Shown: positions 12,013 through 56,441, numbered from the stretch's first letter. The stretch is DNA of 64,000 nucleotides from IMGVR_UViG_3300025012_000026:62001-126000, one strand, 5' to 3'. Translations and numbers: made by a program. Notes: generated by a model from the sequence alone, not told the origin.

Positions 12013-12196
12013 GTAAAAACATATACTCGGACGTTGCCGAGGAATTTAAGCTCTTGGAGTGTTAAGCAACTTGAGTAGCATTAGAAATAATGTGAAAAAG
12101 AACACGATGAATGGAAAATGAAACATAGAGTTATAACTTATTTGTTTAATTTATAACTTCTTATAAGTTTTCAGTAACGGTTATTCTTCATTAAAT
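12013..12196 (+). ncRNA. Predicted omegaRNA (right-end scaffold plus guide from flank 12181 onward)
   Basis: CTCGG/CCGAG hairpin, GGAATTTAAGCTCTTGGAG...GAGTAG scaffold shared with the second IS607 element. Confidence 0.6.
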
Positions 12197-28909: not shown

Positions 28910-29305
28910 TGCTTATTGTAGCATGGATTGGGTTGAGTTGTAAAGGTTAGGGTTTTTGGGATGGATATATTATCCCATAAAAGTATGTTTTTATTTTGTT
29001 TGAAATAATGGTTTTGAAAGTGGCTTATAGCAAGGGTTGTAGAGGTGGTAATTGTTGGGATTTGGGTTATTTGGAGGGATTTTTGAGGTAAATTAGTTAG
29101 AATTTAATATTTTTTATTTTTAAAGAGCTGTTGAGGTTCTTTTTGTTTTGTTTTGTTTGGGTAGAAATTGAAATTGAATTTAATATTGGTTGGATAGGAG
29201 TCAGGCCAGACTTTTATCTGTAAAACGAGGCACTTGAGTTTTCCTTAGAACTTGAGTGTCTTATTCCAATTGTGGCTCTTATTAAGGAAAGGGGATAGAT
29301 TTATT

Positions 29306-31018
29306 ATGGGATTGATAACAAAAGAGGTTTGGGTAGAAGTAGGTAAAAATTTAAAACATTATGAAAAATTAAATTATTTTATACCAAAATCAATAAATAA
29401 GTACGGAAAATTAACTGTTTCAAGAGGAACTAGAATATTAGTTAAAGTAGAAGATTTGCCTAATCGTTCTGCTGTATTTGTTGATTGTGAATGTAACGGT
29501 TGCGGAAAAGAAATAAATAGAATACCGTGGTATAATTATAAAAGATCAGTAGTAGACGATAATAAATATTATTGTCATCAATGTGCAAAGGCTGGTCATA
29601 AAGAATGGATAAGTTTCTTTAGATGGTGTTACTTAAATTTATATAAAGAATTAGCAGATTATATTTTATCCAGATGGGATTATGAATTGAATATTGATAA
29701 AAATGGTAAATTAATAACACCAAAAGATATTAGTCATTCATCACAAGGTATTAACGGAAAAGGATATTGGTTTAAGTGTTTAGAACATCCAGAGCATCTA
29801 TCAGAACAGAAAAGTATTAGCGGTTTTGTCGGAGGGACTCGTAGTATTACTTGCAATCAATGTAATAAGGTCTCCATTACATACCCTGCTCTCATTAAAT
29901 ATTTAGTAAATGAAGCTGATATGTATAAATACTCTCTTGGTTCAAATGAACAAATCCCTATGAGATGTCCATATTGTGGATATGAGAAGGATATTACAAT
30001 TCCTGTTTTTATAAGAGTTGGATTTGGATGTTCAAGATGTTCAGACGGTGTGTCGTTCAGTCAAAAATTTATAGCATGTTTTTTAGAGCAGATATTAGAT
30101 AAAGATTTTACAATAGAACTAAGTAAAAAAACTTTAAAATGGTGTGATAACTATAGATATGATTTTTATACAGAAAAATTAAACGGAATTATTATAGAGG
30201 CAATGGGTATACAGCACTACGAAGAATCTTTTAGAAAAATAAGTAAAAAAGCTAGAAGTTTAGAAGAAGAACAAAAGAATGACAGAGATAAAGAACAATT
30301 AGCAAAAGAAAATAATATTGAAAATTATATAGTTTTGGATTGTAGAAAAAGTGAAATGAATTGGATTAAAAATAGTATCATGAATAGTAATTTACCAAAA
30401 TTATTAAATTTTATGGAAAAAGATATAGATTGGTTGAAATGTGGCGAAGCAGGTTATTCAAGTTTGATTAAGATTGCTTGTGATTATTGGAATAGTGGAA
30501 TAAAGAGTGTCAGAGAGATAGCAGAGAAAATGAAATTACATAGTGCTACAATTTCAAGATATCTTAAACAAGGTACTGAGTTAAATTGGTGTGATTATGG
30601 TGGGAAAGCAGAGATGTTTCGTAAGGTAATATGTTTAACCACAGGGGAAGTTTTTAATAGTGTTACGGAAGCTGAAAATAAATATAATACTTCTCATATT
30701 TCAGATTGTTGCAAGGGAAATAAAAAGACATCTGGAAAACTTTTAGATGGAACTAAACTTGTGTGGGTTTATTATGAAGAATATATATTAAGAACAGAGG
30801 AAGAAATTACAAGTATTTTAAATAATTCAAAAAATATTCGGAATGTAAAAATAATATGTACAACAACTGGTGAAAAATTTGAAAAAATATCTGATGCGGA
30901 AATCAAATATAATATTTCTGCACAAAGTATATCTAAATGTTGTAAAGGTAAATTAAATTCAGCAGGTAAACATCCCAATACAGGAGAGAAAATGGTTTGG
31001 AAAATATTTGATAAATAA
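29306..31018 (+). CDS. Putative homing endonuclease: zinc ribbons, PD-(D/E)xK (DUF559-like) domain, NUMOD1 repeats
   Basis: CxxC repeats; YRYDFY...IIEAMGIQHY; VICLTTGEVFNS x2; start ATG 29306. Confidence 0.75.
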   Translation: MGLITKEVWVEVGKNLKHYEKLNYFIPKSINKYGKLTVSRGTRILVKVEDLPNRSAVFVDCECNGCGKEINRIPWYNYKRSVVDDNKYYCHQCAKAGHKEWISFFRWCYLNLYKELADYILSRWDYELNIDKNGKLITPKDISHSSQGINGKGYWFKCLEHPEHLSEQKSISGFVGGTRSITCNQCNKVSITYPALIKYLVNEADMYKYSLGSNEQIPMRCPYCGYEKDITIPVFIRVGFGCSRCSDGVSFSQKFIACFLEQILDKDFTIELSKKTLKWCDNYRYDFYTEKLNGIIIEAMGIQHYEESFRKISKKARSLEEEQKNDRDKEQLAKENNIENYIVLDCRKSEMNWIKNSIMNSNLPKLLNFMEKDIDWLKCGEAGYSSLIKIACDYWNSGIKSVREIAEKMKLHSATISRYLKQGTELNWCDYGGKAEMFRKVICLTTGEVFNSVTEAENKYNTSHISDCCKGNKKTSGKLLDGTKLVWVYYEEYILRTEEEITSILNNSKNIRNVKIICTTTGEKFEKISDAEIKYNISAQSISKCCKGKLNSAGKHPNTGEKMVWKIFDK

Positions 31019-33591: not shown

Positions 33592-35203
33592 TCACCTCTA
33601 TATTAAAATCTGGTTCGGGGATATAATCCGATTCCAAAATTTCTTCCATAATTTCATCAACAGAACGTAAATATTTTTGACTATTTTGATTAATAGCATC
33701 TGGTATTTGCTTGCGTAAAGGTTTGGTTGGAGGATCACATTTAATAATAGATATACTTTTTTCACTTTTGTATAAAAATCTACAGAGTGCATGATATTTA
33801 GGAAGATTAAGAATAGCATATCTGTTAGACATATCTTTTTCTTCATCTCCTGTTTCAAATTCTTTAAACAGTGTTTGTGCTCCTCCTCTACCTATAGCAA
33901 AAGATATAATCTGAGGTTGTACTTCTAACATCATTCTAATAAGTGATTGAATTTGAGTTTGTTCTGGAGACTGGAAGAAAAAATGTAAGCATAGTCGGTA
34001 TTTTCTTGCTTCTGTTAAAATTTCTTCAATTCCAGCCTCATTTGACAAATACATTTGGGGTTCGTCAAGAAAAAGCATGAAAATCCTCCTTTTATTTTTA
34101 TCTGTAATATCAAATCTTGATAAAGCTGCAATCCAAAACTTAGAAATAATTAGAGGGATCAGTATCTCAATATTAACTTTTCCGACAGCAACTTTTGGGG
34201 CTTTAATTAAAAGTATTTTTCCTTCATCCATTATCGTCCTGAAGTCAATAGTAGATTTGTTTTGACATATAATTGATTTCAAATAATCATTATTAGTAAG
34301 ATTTCCTACTTTGTTTAACAATGGTTTAATCATATCTCTTTTAACTGATGGAGGTTGGGCTTCAAATCTGTCCCAATATCTAACAACAGAAGCGTTCCTT
34401 TTGTTTTTTCTTAAAGACTTTACTATTTGTTCACGATATTCTACTTCAGTTAACATTTTGATAATTCCTAAAAGAGTTTTAGGATAATCAGTTTGTTTAA
34501 GAATCGCGTTCAATGAATTTGATAAAAGATCCTCACTTGCAAAACCTATTTGTTCTCCGAATCTTTTTTTGAAAAATGAAATTATCTCTGCATGAATAAA
34601 GTGGGGAAACTGTTTCTCAACTTTTTCATCAAATTCTAAGAGATTAATTCCTGGAAGAAAATCTTTATTGGAAAAGTCTAATAAAACAACATCCTCTAAT
34701 CTATTTTCTGGGATAGACATTAAAATATTGTCAATTAATGCTCCATCTGCTACGTCTATAACACAAAATCCTGCGGTATTGAAATTTTGTAAATTGTTAA
34801 TTTTAGATATTTGGATTGCAATATTTTCAGCCAAATTTGTCTTGCCACTCCCAGGTGAACCCACGTATATAGAATTTTTGCTAAGGTCGTCAAAATGATC
34901 TATAGGATAACTAATTACATTTTTTGTATTTAAATCTTTGCCCATTACTATACCATTACCTTTGAGTAAAAATTTACTAGGTTTTAACACTACCCTATCT
35001 CCTAACGAATTTTTATCATCGCCAAACTTCAAATTAGGTAATTTATAATCTGGAATACCTTGACCTAAAATACCATTTGAAATCATTTGAACTGTATAAC
35101 CAAGACATCCTAACACAAATTTACTGCTATATAGAGCAGAATATTTTCCTGATTTAATGGTTAAGTCTTTAATCTTATTAATTTTATCTCCCACTATACT
35201 CAA
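33491..35203 (-). CDS. Type IV coupling protein (VirD4/TraD-like ATPase)
   Basis: GSPGSGKT, VIDVADG, PLLNKV, IDFRTIMDEGKILL, LFLDEPQ...EARKYRL...Q. Confidence 0.85.
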   Translation of the reverse strand: MSIVGDKINKIKDLTIKSGKYSALYSSKFVLGCLGYTVQMISNGILGQGIPDYKLPNLKFGDDKNSLGDRVVLKPSKFLLKGNGIVMGKDLNTKNVISYPIDHFDDLSKNSIYVGSPGSGKTNLAENIAIQISKINNLQNFNTAGFCVIDVADGALIDNILMSIPENRLEDVVLLDFSNKDFLPGINLLEFDEKVEKQFPHFIHAEIISFFKKRFGEQIGFASEDLLSNSLNAILKQTDYPKTLLGIIKMLTEVEYREQIVKSLRKNKRNASVVRYWDRFEAQPPSVKRDMIKPLLNKVGNLTNNDYLKSIICQNKSTIDFRTIMDEGKILLIKAPKVAVGKVNIEILIPLIISKFWIAALSRFDITDKNKRRIFMLFLDEPQMYLSNEAGIEEILTEARKYRLCLHFFFQSPEQTQIQSLIRMMLEVQPQIISFAIGRGGAQTLFKEFETGDEEKDMSNRYAILNLPKYHALCRFLYKSEKSISIIKCDPPTKPLRKQIPDAINQNSQKYLRSVDEIMEEILESDYIPEPDFNIEVIDNDQQRFDVGKIDFGTKVRPFNGERFRDNKKY

Positions 35204-36695
35204 CCCCTTTCATTTCTTCGTAATTAGTGTTGAATAGAAGATATTCTTTATCATCAAATATTGGTCTAAAAGCATATTGCTTAGTTCCTATAGTCATCCA
35301 ACCTTGTCCTTTCTCAATTCTAGATAAGTAGTCAATAATGTGAGGTGGTATATTCATATAATTACTAATATGTTGCAACTCTAAAGAAGTTAAATGAAGA
35401 ATTAAAGTATTGGCACAATTTTTAATAATTAATTCAATATCATCCTTAGAGCAATCAGTGAGGTTCTGGGTGCAAACAAAAATGCCCACCCCTCTCTTAC
35501 GATAACCTTTAGCAATTGCTACAACTCTCTTAATTACTGCATCCGTTTTTAAAATATTCCATGCTTCATCAATTACAATAAGACAATCTTTAAATTCAGT
35601 TTTGAGTAAGAACTTTTCAAAATCCTTAGATATAATAACAATATTCCTTGAAGTTAATTTAGCATATTCACCAGTGATATCAAGAATATAAATTTTCTTA
35701 TGTGCAGATATTTTCTTTATAATTGACTTTACTGCAAAACTCTTGCCACTTCCTGAAATTCCAAAAATGAAAAATGAATTATTAAATGTCTCTGCAAAGT
35801 TAATTTTAATTAATTGATGGTTTTGATAATCATATCCAATAGTAATACCTTTGCCGGAAACATATCTTACAAATGGATAGAAATTACTAATTGCACTTGT
35901 TAAAAATACTTTTAACTCCTTTACATGATCAATTTCTTTGTATGCTCTGAAATTCTTGAAACAATTAAAATGTTCACAATTAGCAAACTTAAATCTTATC
36001 TGCATACCATCTAAAAGCATAGATATTTGCTTTGTTTTTGTTTCTAATTGTTCAAGTGTTTGTCCTTTAATTAAGATATATAATCCAACCATGCAAAGTT
36101 TTTCTTCATTTCCCATAAGATCAACCATTGTTTTTTGTAACTTCTCTACAATTTCATCTTCTACAAAAAACTCTTGATTTGGGTTCTTTGAGGCTTTCCA
36201 ATTTACATTTGCTTCAGTAGTATCAATTCTTTTTTTTACGGCCTTTACAGCCTCTTCTTGTGGCAATGGAAAGATAGTAATAGCAATCTCAGTGTCAGGA
36301 ATCATTAGATTGTTTATGAATCCCACAGAAAGCATTTGAGGATATTGGATAACTTTAATTAATTTAGCAAAATATTTTTCATTGTTTTCAGTGACAGAAA
36401 TATACTTCCTAAATTCTTTAATTTGGATATTGCTTGAAGTTGAACATTCAGATTGAGCATAGTCCATTCCCGAATTACGCAGGTTTTCACAAATATCAGA
36501 ATTGGTAATTAGATAATAACTTGATTCGTTTATTTGTGTATCTTTGTTTAAATAATTTAAATCAGTTTTACAAATTATCCTTGATGAATCATTTAGAGAA
36601 TTTAGCAAATATTTAAACTTGGATCTGAGTAATATTTGATCTTCTTTTGTTGCTAAAAGATAGTTTGCTTTTGGGTAAAGTTGATATTGAAACAT
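35184..36695 (-). CDS. virB4: VirB4-like conjugation ATPase (short form)
   Basis: YPQML..GF...FYPF N-domain; GISGSGKS; LIVIDEAW; RKRGVG...TQN. Confidence 0.85.
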   Translation of the reverse strand: MFQYQLYPKANYLLATKEDQILLRSKFKYLLNSLNDSSRIICKTDLNYLNKDTQINESSYYLITNSDICENLRNSGMDYAQSECSTSSNIQIKEFRKYISVTENNEKYFAKLIKVIQYPQMLSVGFINNLMIPDTEIAITIFPLPQEEAVKAVKKRIDTTEANVNWKASKNPNQEFFVEDEIVEKLQKTMVDLMGNEEKLCMVGLYILIKGQTLEQLETKTKQISMLLDGMQIRFKFANCEHFNCFKNFRAYKEIDHVKELKVFLTSAISNFYPFVRYVSGKGITIGYDYQNHQLIKINFAETFNNSFFIFGISGSGKSFAVKSIIKKISAHKKIYILDITGEYAKLTSRNIVIISKDFEKFLLKTEFKDCLIVIDEAWNILKTDAVIKRVVAIAKGYRKRGVGIFVCTQNLTDCSKDDIELIIKNCANTLILHLTSLELQHISNYMNIPPHIIDYLSRIEKGQGWMTIGTKQYAFRPIFDDKEYLLFNTNYEEMKGVEYSGR

Positions 36696-41040: not shown

Positions 41041-41295
41041 TTAATCGTCAAACATATTAAAATTGATTTCTTTTACTGGTTTTGTTTTAGATCGCTCTTC
41101 CATTCTAATTTCATCTTTTTTAACAAATACATCTATATAGATTTCCTCTTCATCCTCTAACATTACCTTATCTTCACCTTTAAAAAAATAATCATACAAA
41201 GCTCTTCTAATTACTTTGCTTCTCCTATTCTTAGGGATTGCATCAAGAAATGGTTTTAAGATTCTGTCGTCTCTAAAGTTTCTAATTTCCCCCAT
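41041..41295 (-). CDS. ParR-like ribbon-helix-helix adaptor
   Basis: IRNFR...FLDAIPKNRRSKVIRRAL; overlaps the parM end. Confidence 0.7.
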   Translation of the reverse strand: MGEIRNFRDDRILKPFLDAIPKNRRSKVIRRALYDYFFKGEDKVMLEDEEEIYIDVFVKKDEIRMEERSKTKPVKEINFNMFDD

Positions 41296-42146
41296 GATAG
41301 ATTCTTCACCAACTTTTCTGCCCCTCTTACATTTGAGAATTGACCTTTATGAAGTATTTTTTGAGGCCAATTAAGAAAATGATATATAGCAGACCCTCCT
41401 CCTCCAGTAACGATTATCTTGTCAATTTTCTTTAAATCATAAAAGGTTGATACATCTGCCTTGATTAATGTTGCAATGTCTGGGTAAAAATTCGCCAATG
41501 AGTCATAACCATCATATAAATCTACTTCATATATTTTTCTATCAGCACGTTTATAGATTTGCCACATTCCATTATTTGTAGTTTTGCAAAGTTCTCTAAC
41601 TATTTCACCTCTGAGTAAATAAATTAGATTTACAGTACCCATTCCTACATCAACGATTAAAGTAACATTAGGAATTTCTTCTTTAGTTTTGCCCTCATCA
41701 TCAAGAAAATAATCCATTGACGCACAATATCCCTGTGGGAGACTTTTTATAAGTGTCGGTTTAAAGTTATGAATATGCTCAATATCCCCAATTTTATAAT
41801 TAATATCCATATCATGAGAAAACATATCAATAATTGATTTTTTTTCACTAAAATAAGATTCAAATGGAAAAAGAAATACTACTTTGTCTTCATTTTTATA
41901 GTTACATAAGGTATATTTAGTAAGAATTTTGAATGTTGATTGCTCTGTTTTAATTCCTTCAAGTGAATAATCTTGAGCATACCCATGTAAAATTGCATCT
42001 TCTCCAATGTAATGATTATCAATAACCCACATTTTCTTTTCAGTAAAAGAATCTTGATATTTCCCTATGACAGAAAGAATCTTTAATTCCCTGCCTTTTG
42101 AATTTAACGCCTTCACATATGAATTACCACAGTCCAAAAACAGCAT
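41256..42146 (-). CDS. parM: ParM/StbA actin-like partition ATPase
   Basis: LDCGNSYVK, LPQG, VDVGMGT, TGGGG, SNVRG; ATG 42146 after AAGGAGG. Confidence 0.88.
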   Translation of the reverse strand: MLFLDCGNSYVKALNSKGRELKILSVIGKYQDSFTEKKMWVIDNHYIGEDAILHGYAQDYSLEGIKTEQSTFKILTKYTLCNYKNEDKVVFLFPFESYFSEKKSIIDMFSHDMDINYKIGDIEHIHNFKPTLIKSLPQGYCASMDYFLDDEGKTKEEIPNVTLIVDVGMGTVNLIYLLRGEIVRELCKTTNNGMWQIYKRADRKIYEVDLYDGYDSLANFYPDIATLIKADVSTFYDLKKIDKIIVTGGGGSAIYHFLNWPQKILHKGQFSNVRGAEKLVKNLSWGKLETLETTES

Positions 42147-42162
42147 ATTTACTCCTCCTTTG

Positions 42163-42209
42163 ATTTGTAATACAATTGTAAGACATTGTCTTACAATTGT
42201 ATTACAAAT
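42163..42209. promoter_or_regulatory. 47-bp palindrome, candidate parC centromere/operator
   Basis: ATTTGTAATACAATTGTAAGACA-T-TGTCTTACAATTGTATTACAAAT (perfect 23-bp arms) next to the parM RBS. Confidence 0.7.
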
Positions 42210-42230
42210 TTTATGAAAATACAAGAGGTT

Positions 42231-43736
42231 TTATGATTCTAATAAATTATCATAATATTTCCAACCAAGAGGTACTCCTGTTTCGGGATGCAATCCGCAA
42301 TACTTTGCTTTATTTCTGCAACATAGAGATATACCTGAATGAAAAATATTATATTTTAATCCAGCCTCTGTTTGAGAATTAAATATTTCTCCAGTAGTAG
42401 TGCATATTATTTTACTAAAAACTCTTTTGCTTTTATATCCACTTTTTCTAGTCTCTTCTTTTGGGTCGTAATCACACCAACCTAGCTCAGTTCCCTGCTT
42501 AAGATATTTTATAACCGTTGATCTACATTTTTTTATTATACTTGATATTTTTAATGTGTTTTTAATATCATTCCACATATTACAAATAGTTTTTACAATG
42601 CTTTTACAAGCATATTCATAACATTTTAACCAGTCTATATCACTTTCTGAAAAATTTAAAAGTTTTGGCAAATCTGATTTCATAATACTGTTTTTAATCC
42701 AATTCATATTTGAATATCGACAATCTAAGACTATGTAATTATTAATATTATTGTTTCTAGCTAATTGTTCTTTTACTTTGTCATTCTCTTGGACTTCATT
42801 TAATCTCATTCTCCATGTACTATTAGTTTCTTCATAATGTTGAATTCCTTGACACTCACAAATAATTTCATCAATTTTATTTATGTAAAAGTCATATTTA
42901 TAATTATCGCACCATTTGAAAGTTTTTTCAGATAATTGTGTATTAAAATCATTGCCTAATAATTGTTCAAATACATTAAATAAAAATTTCTCAGGAAAAC
43001 TTATACCGTCCCCACAACATTCACATCCAAATCCTTTTTTCCACAATTTATCCAAACTCTTTTGTTTCTCATGTCCACAATCTGGACATTTCATTGGAAT
43101 TTTTTTATTTGAACCAACTGAATATTTATAAGCATCTTCTTTATTAACTAAAAATTTAATAAGTTCTTGATGCGTAACTGAAATTGTATTACACATAATA
43201 CAATCAAGACTTATGGTAGATCCTTTTTTTATTGTTGTATAAGTAAAACGAGCAATACTTTTTAATTCGGATTTATGTTCTGGATGATCTAAGCATTTAA
43301 ACCAGTAGCCCTTATTATTAAAACCTACCGAACCATAACTTACATATTTAGGACTTATTATATTGCCATTTTCGTCAATATTTAAACTATAATCCCAACG
43401 TGATAATATCCAATCAGCCAATTCTTTAGAGAGATGGGTATAGCACCACTCATAAAAAGAAATATAATTTTTGTGTCCAGTTTGAGAACATTTATGACAA
43501 TAATATCTTCCATCTTCTTTTACATATTTCTTGTAATTAAGCCATTTCATAGGTTTTAAATATTCTTTACATCCATCACATTGAACGTCAACTATAGCAC
43601 TAGATGCATGTGTTAAATCTTCTACTTTTACTTTAAATTCCTCTCCAAGTTTAGTAAAGGCAAATCCTTTATCTATGTACCACTTTTTACTACTAAAATG
43701 CCACTTCATTATTACCTCTTTAGTTATTAATCCCAC
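42231..43736 (-). CDS. Putative homing endonuclease, paralog of 29306-31018
   Basis: Shared MGLITKEV, SRWDY, KGYWFKCL.HPEH, YDFY...GIQHYEE, IICTTTGE; TTGACA-17-TATAAT promoter at 43814-43786. Confidence 0.75.
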   Translation of the reverse strand: MGLITKEVIMKWHFSSKKWYIDKGFAFTKLGEEFKVKVEDLTHASSAIVDVQCDGCKEYLKPMKWLNYKKYVKEDGRYYCHKCSQTGHKNYISFYEWCYTHLSKELADWILSRWDYSLNIDENGNIISPKYVSYGSVGFNNKGYWFKCLDHPEHKSELKSIARFTYTTIKKGSTISLDCIMCNTISVTHQELIKFLVNKEDAYKYSVGSNKKIPMKCPDCGHEKQKSLDKLWKKGFGCECCGDGISFPEKFLFNVFEQLLGNDFNTQLSEKTFKWCDNYKYDFYINKIDEIICECQGIQHYEETNSTWRMRLNEVQENDKVKEQLARNNNINNYIVLDCRYSNMNWIKNSIMKSDLPKLLNFSESDIDWLKCYEYACKSIVKTICNMWNDIKNTLKISSIIKKCRSTVIKYLKQGTELGWCDYDPKEETRKSGYKSKRVFSKIICTTTGEIFNSQTEAGLKYNIFHSGISLCCRNKAKYCGLHPETGVPLGWKYYDNLLES

Positions 43737-43878
43737 AATCTAATCCTCCTCTTTCTATAAATTATTATATTTCTCCCTACTTAATATTATAGCATAAATA
43801 GTAAATCATGTCAACATATATTTATTTTATAATTTAATAATTTTCTCTATCCCTTTCAGTGTTGTCCGGCCCAAACAC

Positions 43879-43917
43879 TTATCAACATGTGTATAAAATT
43901 TTAGAAACTTATACACA
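43879..43917. promoter_or_regulatory. Cluster of three DnaA boxes upstream of rep
   Basis: TTATCAACA, TGTGTATAA, TTATACACA versus consensus TTATNCACA. Confidence 0.7.
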
Positions 43918-43994
43918 GCCTTGTCGATTTGTAGTATAATGTATTAACATGTCCAACCCATATTAATGTTAATTTTTAGCAAAAGAATAATAGC

Positions 43995-44065
43995 AAAAAC
44001 TCCTTGAAGTGCTAGTTTGGTCGCGAACACTTCAAGGAGCCACAGCAGAGGTTGTTTTCGTTTGT
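43995..44065 (-). ncRNA. Counter-transcribed antisense RNA (ctRNA) of the rep leader
   Basis: Antisense promoter TAGACA(44100-95)-17-TATAAT(44077-72); 12-bp terminator stem 44000-44039 plus U5. Confidence 0.7.
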
Positions 44066-44144
44066 ATTTTTATTATAACAAAAAGAAAACCTTCTGTCTA
44101 GTGTGTTTTTGTTGTTGGCAAAACATGGAGAGAAGGTTTTTATT

Positions 44145-45074
44145 ATGAATATGATTAGAGATCCAAAGAAGTTAAGAAGAGTTCCAATCAAAGAAGAATT
44201 AGTTGAAATTACAGGTGATTACATTAAGGCAGTTATTTTGCAACAATTTATTTACTGGTCAGAAAGAACCAAAGATTATGACCAATTTGTTTTAGAAGAA
44301 AAGTTTCAGGCCGAAAGGTGTGGATATGAATACAAGGCAGAATTGAAAAACGGATGGATATTTAAGAGTTCTGAACAACTATCAGAAGAAACTATGCTTA
44401 GATTAAAACATACCGCAATGCGTACACATATTAAGGTATTAGTGGATAAGGGTTTTCTATCTGAGAGAACTAATCCTCTTGATAAACGGGATAGAACCAT
44501 ACAATATCGTGTGAACATTTTAGCAATACAACTTGATCTACTAGAACATAACTATGTCTTAGATGGATATTCTAGTCCAATTAATTTTGAAACTCTTATG
44601 GAAGTTATCCACAAGAAAAAGCAATCTCGGAATGCGGAAATGCAAACATCATTAAATGGAAATGCTTCATCAGAATGTGAGATTGCACAGCCGGAAAACA
44701 ATAATGGCATAGAATATGGGGTTGAAGACATAATTGCATTCTCGGAAAACGGAAATGCATCTCCGCAAATATGCAATGCAACTAGCGAAAACATGCAAGC
44801 ATTACCAGAGACTACTTACAGAGATATATATCTTATTGATATTAATCGCGTGTGGGAAGAGGTTGTGGATAACTTGAGAAAGAAATTGTCTCCTGCTTCT
44901 CTGTCTGCTTGGATATTACCCATCATACCAGAAATACAGGAGACAAAGTTAATACTTAATTGTTCAAGTCAATTTGCTGTGGATTGGATAGAGGGAAAAT
45001 ATCTTAGTATGATTGTTAATTGTTTGCCTGAAAATAGTGGAATTAAGGATGTTGTTGTATGTGAAAGTTCTTAA
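44145..45074 (+). CDS. Replication initiator: N-terminal wHTH plus C-terminal DnaA domain-I-like region
   Basis: AVILQQFIYW...GWIFKSSEQLSEE...LVDKGFL; VWEEVVDNLRKKLSPASLSAWI...SQFAVDWIEGKY. Confidence 0.8.
   Translation: MNMIRDPKKLRRVPIKEELVEITGDYIKAVILQQFIYWSERTKDYDQFVLEEKFQAERCGYEYKAELKNGWIFKSSEQLSEETMLRLKHTAMRTHIKVLVDKGFLSERTNPLDKRDRTIQYRVNILAIQLDLLEHNYVLDGYSSPINFETLMEVIHKKKQSRNAEMQTSLNGNASSECEIAQPENNNGIEYGVEDIIAFSENGNASPQICNATSENMQALPETTYRDIYLIDINRVWEEVVDNLRKKLSPASLSAWILPIIPEIQETKLILNCSSQFAVDWIEGKYLSMIVNCLPENSGIKDVVVCESS
44605..44872. other. Putative replication origin inside rep
   Basis: Perfect DnaA boxes TTATCCACA (44605) and TGTGGATAA (44864) flank TCTCGGAAnnCGGAAATGCA repeats (44625, 44740). 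Confidence 0.65.
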
Positions 45075-56276: not shown

Positions 56277-56441
56277 TCTCTGCTACTAAAAATATAGACA
56301 AATATACTCAATTATCTATATCTAGATAATTGCTGATTCATAGTGTCTGTTTTTGTATTATTTCTAACACTACTCACATTTGGTGTAACACTCCACAGCC
56401 GTAAATTCCCGACTAGCCATCGGTATTTGATAATATTTGTT

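What the first reader, a model, noticed from the sequence alone, without database searches (positions are those of the whole stretch)
43995..44147. Antisense-RNA translational switch controlling the replication initiator
Seen: antisense promoter TAGACA-17-TATAAT and a 12-bp terminator define a ~70-nt ctRNA. In the mRNA, AAAACCTTCT (44086-95) is exactly complementary to the RBS region AGAAGGTTTT (44131-40), and can alternatively pair with AGAGGTTGTTTT (44047-58), which the ctRNA covers. Established: ctRNA copy control is typical of Gram-positive plasmids (pSK41-like translational attenuation). Inference: ctRNA binding frees the anti-SD to block Rep translation, giving plasmid-style copy control of a prophage.
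Basis: partly seen in the sequence, partly recalled or inferred. Interest (0 to 1): 0.65.

Follow-up and report, generated by a model that had tools for sequence, protein, structure and literature searches.

The report
Antisense RNA switch controlling phage Rep
A 227-kb phage carries a plasmid-style copy-control device, a small antisense RNA predicted to refold the leader of its replication-initiator mRNA into an off-state hairpin. The device is a new family of a well-known kind, and its hairpin loop has flipped orientation at least three times in evolution.

Summary
The evidence is computational only; no transcript data could be obtained.

- **Antisense RNA:** a near-consensus antisense promoter (44100..44072, extended -10) and a 12-bp hairpin plus U-run (44039..43995) define a countertranscript (ctRNA) of about 71 nt inside the rep leader.
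- **Alternative pairings:** the anti-SD segment pairs either with the Shine-Dalgarno (SD) region (hairpin H3, 44085-44141) or with a pre-emptor (44045-44065) that the ctRNA tail covers.
- **Conservation:** the same layout recurs, with different sequences, in Rep relatives down to 40% identity. Nine of 10 leaders have a positioned antisense promoter. Hairpin arms covary, and their mismatches are G.U only on the antisense strand. The H2 and H3 duplexes beat shuffles in most lineages.
- **Output level:** H3 is followed by 5-7 U in 8 of 9 lineages, which is a terminator shape. The output may therefore be transcription attenuation (pT181/pIP501-like), SD occlusion (pSK41-like), or both.
- **Rejected:** a leader-peptide coupling model, because the open reading frame is not conserved.
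- **Family:** no Rfam family matches, and Rep is a winged-helix protein with a DnaA domain I, not RepA_N.
- **New here:** the 16-nt loop is exactly inverted between close relatives, needing at least 3 changes on the Rep tree. Two conserved perfect DnaA boxes lie inside rep.

The parts
43912..43940 (+). rep promoter (TACACA-17-TATAAT); transcript start near 43947
   Evidence: 10 of 12. Identical in relatives with 87-100% identical Rep and kept as TAGAAT in L031. The sequence conservation of the leader begins at about 43898.
43947..44144 (+). rep mRNA leader (about 198 nt)
   Evidence: After correcting for the loop flip, the leader is 96-99.6% identical to relatives whose rep coding DNA is only 88-92% identical.
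43995..44065 (-). ctRNA, about 71 nt: 24-26-nt unstructured 5' tail, one hairpin, U-run
   Evidence: The same architecture (70-84 nt) is found in L015, L031, L054, L050, L053 and L055. L020 has it too (5' tail, 15-bp hairpin, U-run) by the fold; cut that transcript short at an internal U-run.
44072..44100 (-). ctRNA promoter TAGACA-17-TGtTATAAT
   Evidence: and (0 of 1000 shuffles). The only variable base in close relatives is the n of TGn. L015 has TTTACA in place of TAGACA.
44000..44039 (.). hairpin H1: ctRNA terminator and recognition hairpin, which also folds in the mRNA
   Evidence: Two compensatory pairs in L031. Mismatches are G.U on the - strand RNA and A.C on the + strand RNA in L027, L020, L054 and L055.
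44012..44027 (.). 16-nt loop, found as its exact reverse complement in close relatives (flip or flop)
   Evidence: At least 3 orientation changes are needed on the Rep tree. The loop core AGTTTGGCGAC is conserved in one or the other orientation down to 40% Rep identity. It is single-copy in the genome.
44045..44065 (+). pre-emptor arm (H2 5' arm), complementary to the ctRNA 5' tail
   Evidence: prefix folds. In one search the H2 duplex beats shuffles in 7 of 9 lineages.
44078..44097 (+). shared arm: H2 3' arm and anti-SD (H3 5' arm); overlaps the antisense -35
44127..44141 (+). SD (GGAGAGAAGG) with U-run 44137-44141: H3 3' arm, terminator-like
   Evidence: The hairpin without the U-run is -16.1 kcal/mol. 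A run of 5-7 U follows the arm in 8 of 9 lineages.
44145..45074 (+). rep, 309 aa: N-terminal DnaD/O-like DNA-binding part plus C-terminal DnaA domain I
   Evidence: Pfam DnaA_N 7.9e-12. PHROGs families for replication initiation. PDB 4tps_B 2e-13. Homologues lie on Bacillota plasmids next to partition-type ATPase genes.
44605..44872 (.). candidate origin inside rep: two perfect inverted DnaA boxes flanking direct repeats
   Evidence: pair I5; direct repeats D2, D3, D6; the boxes at +460 and +719 are conserved in most relatives, and the 64-kb window holds only 3 perfect boxes.

Best explanation
This is a cis-encoded countertranscript (ctRNA) copy-control unit for the phage's replication initiator.

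**Layout.** The rep mRNA starts near 43947 and has a leader of about 198 nt. From a strong constitutive promoter inside that leader (44100..44072), the opposite strand yields a ctRNA of about 71 nt: a 24-26-nt single-stranded 5' tail plus one terminator hairpin.

**ON state (inferred).** On a nascent rep mRNA without ctRNA, the pre-emptor 44045-65 pairs with 44078-97 (H2). This keeps the anti-SD arm occupied, so the SD and AUG stay usable and RNA polymerase reads on.

**OFF state (inferred).** When ctRNA is abundant (many genome copies), its hairpin loop kisses the complementary loop of the mRNA hairpin H1 (44000-39), and its tail zips onto 44040-65. H2 cannot form, and 44085-97 pairs with 44127-41 instead (H3). 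H3 buries the SD and is followed by UUUUU 3 nt before the AUG. Rep synthesis is then shut off by SD occlusion, by premature termination, or by both.

**What is shown and what is inferred.** Shown: all sequence elements, their statistical excess, their positional conservation and covariation in relatives, and the predicted alternative folds. Inferred: that the ctRNA is made, that it binds, which output level dominates, and that Rep dose sets copy number during plasmid-like carriage.
For: - **Coordinates and statistics:**
- **Alternative folds:** every prefix fold has H2. The fold with 43995-44065 blocked has H3.
- **Leader constraint:** the leader changes more slowly than the coding DNA.
- **Antisense promoter:** 9 of 10 diverged leaders (Rep 40-100% identical, including a second leader type in L021 and the first rep of L050) have an antisense promoter with its -35 box starting 41-56 nt before the start codon. 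Each is reached by at most 5 of 1000 shuffles.
- **Hairpin on the antisense strand:** arms covary (L031: 2 double changes; L053, L020 and L054 have different arms that still pair). The hairpin folds more stably as minus-strand RNA in 12 of 12 cases. Mismatches are G.U only on the minus strand.
- **H3 and H2 duplexes:** H3 beats shuffles in 6 of 9 lineages and H2 in 7 of 9. Paired segments differ between lineages: CCTTCT/AGAAGG in the window, CCTCTT/AAGAGG in L037, AAAAAATCTC/GAGATTTTTT in L050, AAAAAACAGC/GCTGTTTTTT in L055.
- **Literature:** pT181 has a pre-emptor and a stem-loop IV that holds the RBS. In pSK41, RNAI binds about 100 nt upstream and induces an RBS-sequestering stem-loop (PMC5703833).
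Against:
- Among the close relatives H2 and H3 hardly vary, so formal covariation there is nil. RNAalifold on a MAFFT alignment of the diverged H3 regions found no consensus. Support for H2 and H3 therefore rests on per-sequence folds and duplex statistics.
- For the full-length free leader, the two states differ by under 1 kcal/mol, and the predicted SD accessibility changes little (0.17 against 0.11).
- Three lineages fit less well. L037 has neither a good antisense promoter nor significant H2 or H3 duplexes. L020 lacks the U-run and its H3 duplex is not significant. The H3 duplex of L054 is marginal.
Confidence: 0.7

Rival explanations
1. Same ctRNA and same alternative helices, but the operative output is transcription attenuation, as in pT181, pIP501 and pAMbeta1. 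H3 acts as an intrinsic terminator and the rep transcript ends at about 44141 before the AUG. SD burial is incidental.
For: - H3 is a stable hairpin (-10 to -20 kcal/mol without the U-run), directly followed by 5-7 U and then 0-4 nt before the start codon, in 8 of 9 lineages.
- L054 and L037 keep U7 although they have no A-run for it to pair with. The U-run therefore seems selected for itself.
- In pT181 the terminator stem-loop IV also contains the RBS (PMC5703833).
Against: - L020 has the hairpin but no U-run.
- The stem is long, interrupted and GC-poor at its base, and in most lineages the U-run can pair with a conserved A-run. Both features also suit pure SD occlusion.
Confidence: 0.4
2. 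Leader-peptide coupling, as in R1 tap or IncB repY. A small open reading frame ending at the TGA that overlaps the rep ATG (ATGA, 44145-48) must be translated to open the SD hairpin, and the ctRNA blocks the ribosome site of that frame (AGAGG 44047-51, TTG 44062).
For: In the window the frame is open for 47 codons up to the overlapping stop. A 7-codon mini-frame starts at ATG 44125.
Against: - The long frame is cut by a stop in L006, L024, L025 and L027, and shifted by indels in the L015 group, L026, L031 and L035.
- The mini-frame loses its ATG in L028 and L031 and its frame in L026 and L035.
- L021 and L037 have no overlapping stop.
Confidence: 0.04
3. There is no regulatory RNA pairing. The elements act at the DNA or transcription level: convergent promoters 130 nt apart interfere with each other, and the hairpin is only an insulating terminator for upstream genes, or a protein or origin site recognised in either orientation.
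For: - The rep and antisense promoters face each other.
- The loop motif is conserved in either orientation, as a double-stranded DNA site would be.
- DnaA boxes and near-boxes surround the region.
Against: - The strand asymmetry of the hairpin mismatches (G.U on the minus RNA only) points to an RNA hairpin on the antisense strand.
- The conserved pre-emptor and anti-SD complementarity, carried by different sequences, has no role in an interference-only model.
- The loop motif occurs once in 227 kb.
Confidence: 0.1

Closest known systems
pT181 RNAI / repC leader (also pIP501 RNAIII and pAMbeta1): antisense-driven transcription attenuation
   Same: The countertranscript is complementary to the rep leader. 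A pre-emptor competes for the 5' arm of a terminator-like stem-loop that contains the RBS and lies just before the start codon (PMC5703833; here).
   Different: The initiator is unrelated (not Rep_trans or PriCT). The ctRNA has one stem-loop. No Cop repressor was identified. No Rfam ctRNA family matches, even at E up to 10. The host element is a 227-kb phage.
pSK41 RNAI (staphylococcal RepA_N plasmids): distal antisense binding that induces an RBS-sequestering stem-loop
   Same: The antisense target lies about 80-150 nt upstream of the start codon. Binding is predicted to induce a hairpin holding the SD. The candidate origin lies inside the rep gene, as in RepA_N plasmids (the latter from my own knowledge).
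   Different: pSK41 RNAI has two stem-loops and an 18-nt tail that can be deleted. Here there is one stem-loop and a 24-26-nt tail that covers the pre-emptor. Rep has no RepA_N domain.
pMV158 RNAII
   Same: A small RNA made of a 5' tail and a single terminator hairpin. In pMV158 the tail starts the pairing.
   Different: RNAII binds next to the ribosome site and blocks it directly. Here the target is distal and acts through refolding.
Hairpin loop (inverted-repeat spacer) inversion by replication template switching
   Same: An exact reverse complement of the spacer between perfect arms, with length kept. This is the signature described for rRNA hairpins and yeast inverted repeats (PMC8794818; PMC8604942, abstract).
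   Different: Here it hits the recognition hairpin of an antisense control RNA and recurs at least three times in one family. I did not find this described, in a limited literature search.

Membership tests
ctRNA replication control with pre-emptor and terminator/sequestor alternative folding (functional class) | Promoter inside the rep leader, reading antisense | tested here: met
   Scores 11 of 12 plus TG. Conserved in position in 9 of 10 diverged leaders, each reached by at most 5 of 1000 shuffles.
ctRNA replication control with pre-emptor and terminator/sequestor alternative folding (functional class) | Intrinsic terminator that gives a short, discrete antisense RNA | tested here: met
   Hairpin plus U-run, z = -3.99. 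Covariation and minus-strand-only G.U pairs.
ctRNA replication control with pre-emptor and terminator/sequestor alternative folding (functional class) | Mutually exclusive leader helices, one of which is disrupted by ctRNA pairing | tested here: met
   Folds with and without the ctRNA footprint. Duplex statistics in 9 lineages. This is prediction only.
ctRNA replication control with pre-emptor and terminator/sequestor alternative folding (functional class) | The antisense RNA is expressed and lowers Rep synthesis and copy number | not testable with these tools
No culture or reporter data exist.
pSK41-type RNAI system (RepA_N plasmids) | Initiator of the RepA_N family | tested here: not met
   Pfam finds only DnaA_N at residues 235-294. 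PHROGs and PDB searches agree.
pSK41-type RNAI system (RepA_N plasmids) | RNAI with two stem-loops, both needed | tested here: not met
   A single stem-loop is predicted in all relatives.
Curated Rfam ctRNA and antisense families | Match to a covariance model at the gathering score | tested here: not met
   Nothing at the gathering score in this region. At E up to 10 there are only chance-level hits, none to a plasmid ctRNA family.
Phage-plasmid (prophage kept as a plasmid) | Phage virion and packaging genes together with a plasmid-type replication and partition module on one replicon | tested here: met
   Viral record of 227,247 bases. Terminase large subunit at 35184-36695, ParM-like partition protein at 41256-42224, and Rep. 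Relatives link rep with ParM-like or ParA genes.
Phage-plasmid (prophage kept as a plasmid) | Extrachromosomal maintenance in a lysogen | not testable with these tools
   Metagenomic contig, host unknown. One tyrosine recombinase is present; it could be an integrase or a dimer resolvase.

The most novel reading that the evidence does not exclude
The recurrent exact inversion of the recognition loop may be a one-step switch of ctRNA specificity. Because both RNAs are read from the same DNA, an inversion keeps the cognate loop-loop complementarity: it only swaps which RNA carries which loop. Against a non-inverted relative, however, the two loops become identical instead of complementary. Closely related phage-plasmids that share the same hosts could then escape each other's copy control (incompatibility). 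Three observations are consistent with this. Flip and flop variants with 93-99% identical Rep occur in the same metagenomes (3300025000; Ga0209728). The loop core is conserved in either orientation down to 40% Rep identity. An element with two tandem rep genes uses two unrelated ctRNA types (L050).
Probability: 0.2. Interest if true: 0.7.

Novelty: new member of a known kind. Interest (0 to 1): 0.45.

Why it matters
Countertranscript control of Rep is textbook for small Gram-positive plasmids. Here it is documented by comparative evidence for a new, uncurated RNA family tied to an unusual initiator (DNA-binding domain fused to DnaA domain I). The family occurs in very large phages and related elements from groundwater.

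- It supports the view that these phages can live as copy-controlled plasmids.
- It gives a compact module (promoter, leader, ctRNA, rep with an internal candidate origin) that could be tested as a replicon.
- The recurrent loop inversion offers a natural experiment on how antisense specificity and incompatibility evolve.

Tried and rejected
- **Leader-peptide coupling:** rejected, because the frame is not conserved.
- **Known RNA families:** none in Rfam at the gathering score or at E up to 10.
- **DNA and protein similarity:** no DNA or protein match in the phage collection. Only one short DNA match in plasmids.
- **Formal covariation for H2 and H3 among close relatives:** the leader is almost invariant, so the counts say nothing either way.
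- **RNAalifold on diverged H3 regions:** I used per-sequence folds and duplex statistics instead.
- **Reads:** There is therefore no evidence on expression, or on whether both loop orientations coexist within one population.
- **Assembly artefact as the cause of the loop flip:** considered unlikely. The arms (12 bp) are shorter than usual assembly k-mers, and each orientation recurs in several independent assemblies.
- **Site-specific recombinase as the cause:** unlikely for a 16-bp spacer. There is no serine recombinase in the genome.
- **Host:** the best match in cultured genomes is only 33% identical (a Desulfosporosinus contig). The host is unresolved but probably Bacillota.
- **Not used:** structure prediction, complex prediction and the large protein-profile search, because the family scans had already settled the protein's nature.

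Full report
**1. Observation**

The window is bases 62001-126000 of a 227,247-base viral record.

- On the minus strand, TAGACA (44100..44095), 17 nt and TATAAT (44077..44072) form a promoter-like site. It scores 11 of 12 and has a TG extension.
- About 7 nt downstream an A at 44065 can serve as the start.
- The transcript would run through a perfect 12-bp hairpin (44039..44000, 16-nt loop) into a U-run (43999..43995), giving about 71 nt.
- As RNA it folds at -23.1 kcal/mol, z = -3.99.
- AAAACCTTCT (44086-95) is the exact complement of the SD zone AGAAGGTTTT (44131-40). Only 4 of 5000 shuffles reach 10 nt.
- A promoter this good at this distance from the start codon occurs in 0 of 1000 shuffles.

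**2. The gene**

The ORF from ATG 44145 to 45074 (309 aa) has a good SD (GGAGAGAAGG).

- Its C-terminus matches DnaA domain I (Pfam DnaA_N 7.9e-12; Bacillus subtilis DnaA domain I structure 4tps, 2e-13).
- The N-terminal half matches phage families annotated as DnaD-like helicase loader or O-like initiator.
- It also matches proteins on Bacillus, Alicyclobacillus and Vagococcus plasmids, in Vagococcus beside a partition-type ATPase.
- In the window a ParM-like gene lies upstream (41256-42224), separated from rep by a homing-endonuclease-like gene.
- In relatives rep is linked with ParM-like or ParA genes.
- The window also holds a terminase large subunit and a ribonucleotide reductase. The genome has one tyrosine recombinase.

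Calling the element a phage with a plasmid-type replication and partition module is justified. Calling it a prophage kept as a plasmid is an inference.

**3. Relatives**

Six IMG/VR contigs, 25 metagenome loci and several assembled contigs carry Rep relatives from 100% down to 40% identity.

Close relatives (Rep 87-99%):
- The 247 bases from just upstream of the rep -35 box to the ATG are 96-99.6% identical once the loop flip is allowed for. The rep coding DNA is 88-92% identical, and the DNA further upstream is unrelated.
- The few changes are telling. The variable base next to the antisense -10 box is the n of TGnTATAAT. The L015 group replaces TAGACA with TTTACA.

More distant relatives:
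- Sequences differ but the layout persists. The order is: A-run, hairpin, pre-emptor zone, antisense -10 and -35, anti-SD immediately 5' of the -35 complement, a hairpin whose 3' arm is the SD, U-run, start codon.
- Nine of ten leaders, including a second leader type (L021 and the first rep of L050), have an antisense promoter starting 41-56 nt before the start codon. Each is reached by at most 5 of 1000 shuffles.

**4. The hairpin is an antisense-strand RNA structure**

- L031 has two double compensatory changes.
- The arms of L053/L055, L054 and L020 differ from the window's at many positions and still pair.
- In L027, L020, L054 and L055 the imperfect positions are G.U in the minus-strand RNA and A.C in the plus-strand RNA, never the reverse.
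- The minus-strand RNA is the more stable fold in 12 of 12 hairpins.

This asymmetry argues for selection on the ctRNA hairpin, not on a DNA cruciform or on the mRNA copy alone.

**5. The switch**

- Folding of growing prefixes of the leader gives an 18-pair helix H2 (44045-65 with 44078-97) as soon as its 3' arm exists.
- When 43995-44065 is made unavailable (the ctRNA footprint), the long hairpin H3 (44085-44141) forms and buries the SD.
- For the complete free leader the two states lie within 1 kcal/mol, so the decision has to be kinetic, as in the known attenuation systems.
- Across nine diverged leaders, the H3 duplex beats 1000 shuffles at 12 or fewer in six, and the H2 duplex does so in seven.
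- The paired sequences differ between lineages: CCTTCT/AGAAGG, CCTCTT/AAGAGG, AAAAAATCTC/GAGATTTTTT and AAAAAACAGC/GCTGTTTTTT.
- The upper stem of H3 also changes while staying paired.
- Exceptions: L037 has an insertion, weak duplexes and no good promoter. In L020 the H3 duplex is weak and there is no U-run. The H3 duplex of L054 is marginal.

**6. Output level**

- In 8 of 9 lineages the SD arm of H3 is followed directly by 5-7 U and then 0-4 nt before the start codon. That is the shape of an intrinsic terminator.
- Two lineages keep U7 without an A-run to pair with it.
- This is the pT181 design, in which stem-loop IV contains the RBS but acts mainly as a terminator. In pSK41 the induced stem-loop acts by sequestering the RBS (PMC5703833).

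The data cannot separate the two outputs. I rate a contribution of attenuation at about 0.4-0.5.

**7. Rejected alternative**

A frame ending in the TGA that overlaps the rep ATG is open for 47 codons in the window. It is interrupted, shifted or absent in many relatives, and the 7-codon mini-frame is not kept either.

**8. Loop inversion (new)**

- The 16-nt loop of the window (and of L002-L005, L022, L023 and L033) is the exact reverse complement of the loop in L006, L007, L024, L025, L027-L029, L032 and L035, between identical arms.
- The same happens between L053 and L055.
- A loop core close to AGTTTGGCGAC is found in one or the other orientation in all twelve distinct hairpins, although the arms have diverged.
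- On a Rep tree the orientation needs at least 3 changes. Leader-rep recombination could inflate this count.
- Exact spacer inversion between perfect arms is the known signature of replication template switching (PMC8794818; PMC8604942, abstract).
- It is tolerated here because sense and antisense loops stay complementary. Whether it changes cross-talk between relatives is open. The tails and stems remain complementary, and part of the window's loop is self-complementary (UCGCGA), so cross-reaction may persist.
- Both orientations occur in the same metagenomes.

**9. Comparison and novelty**

The element works like the pT181/pIP501 and pSK41 systems but is not a member of those families. The Rep families differ, there is one stem-loop instead of two or more, and no Rfam model matches. 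It is a new member of a known kind. The added interest comes from three points:
- its host element, a 227-kb phage;
- its initiator type;
- the recurrent loop inversion.

**10. Limits**

All evidence is computational.

Noticed in passing
window 44605-44613 (+) and 44864-44872 (-); repeats 44621-44761: Two perfect DnaA boxes (TTATCCACA) form a 13-nt perfect inverted repeat inside rep. They flank direct repeats in the part that encodes the variable Rep linker. The 64-kb window holds only 3 perfect boxes. The positions +460 and +719 are conserved in most relatives. This is a candidate origin inside rep. Together with the DnaA domain I at the Rep C-terminus it suggests cooperation with host DnaA.
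   Followed up: partly
window 43879, 43888, 43909: Three DnaA-box variants with one mismatch each lie around the rep promoter; one overlaps the -35 box. Relatives have perfect boxes 251-297 nt upstream of rep.
   Followed up: partly
window 42231-43736 (-), promoter 43814..43786; paralogue 29252-31018 (+): A homing-endonuclease-like gene (PHROG 4538/9084) with its own perfect TTGACA-17-TGnTATAAT promoter sits between the ParM-like gene and rep. In L015 and L016 the ParM-like gene is the nearest large gene upstream of rep (L016 has only a 50-aa ORF between), so this looks like an insertion. A paralogue lies elsewhere in the window.
   Followed up: partly
L050 1179-2210 and 2501-3421: This element has two tandem rep paralogues, both with a DnaA_N domain. 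Each has its own, unrelated antisense promoter and terminator set (type B as in L021, then type A as in the window), next to a ParM-like gene, DNA polymerase A and a primase-helicase.
   Followed up: partly
window 56330-56399 (-) and 12051-12118 (+): Two RAGATH-18 RNA matches above the Rfam gathering score (70.5 and 48.4 bits).
   Followed up: no
window 44085-44141, minus strand: The complement of H3 is also a hairpin followed by a U-rich run (UUUUCUUUUU) on the minus strand, ending at the antisense -10 box. It could stop antisense read-through coming from inside rep.
   Followed up: no
G000:C1:206665-207132 (-), outside the window: This is the only tyrosine recombinase of the 227-kb genome (Phage_integrase, 91.9 bits). 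No serine recombinase was found. Whether it is an integrase or a dimer resolvase is undetermined.
   Followed up: no
window 43889-43916: An 8-bp inverted repeat GTGTATAA / TTATACAC spans the rep -35 box. It is a possible operator, and it is not conserved in the L015 or L024 groups.
   Followed up: no
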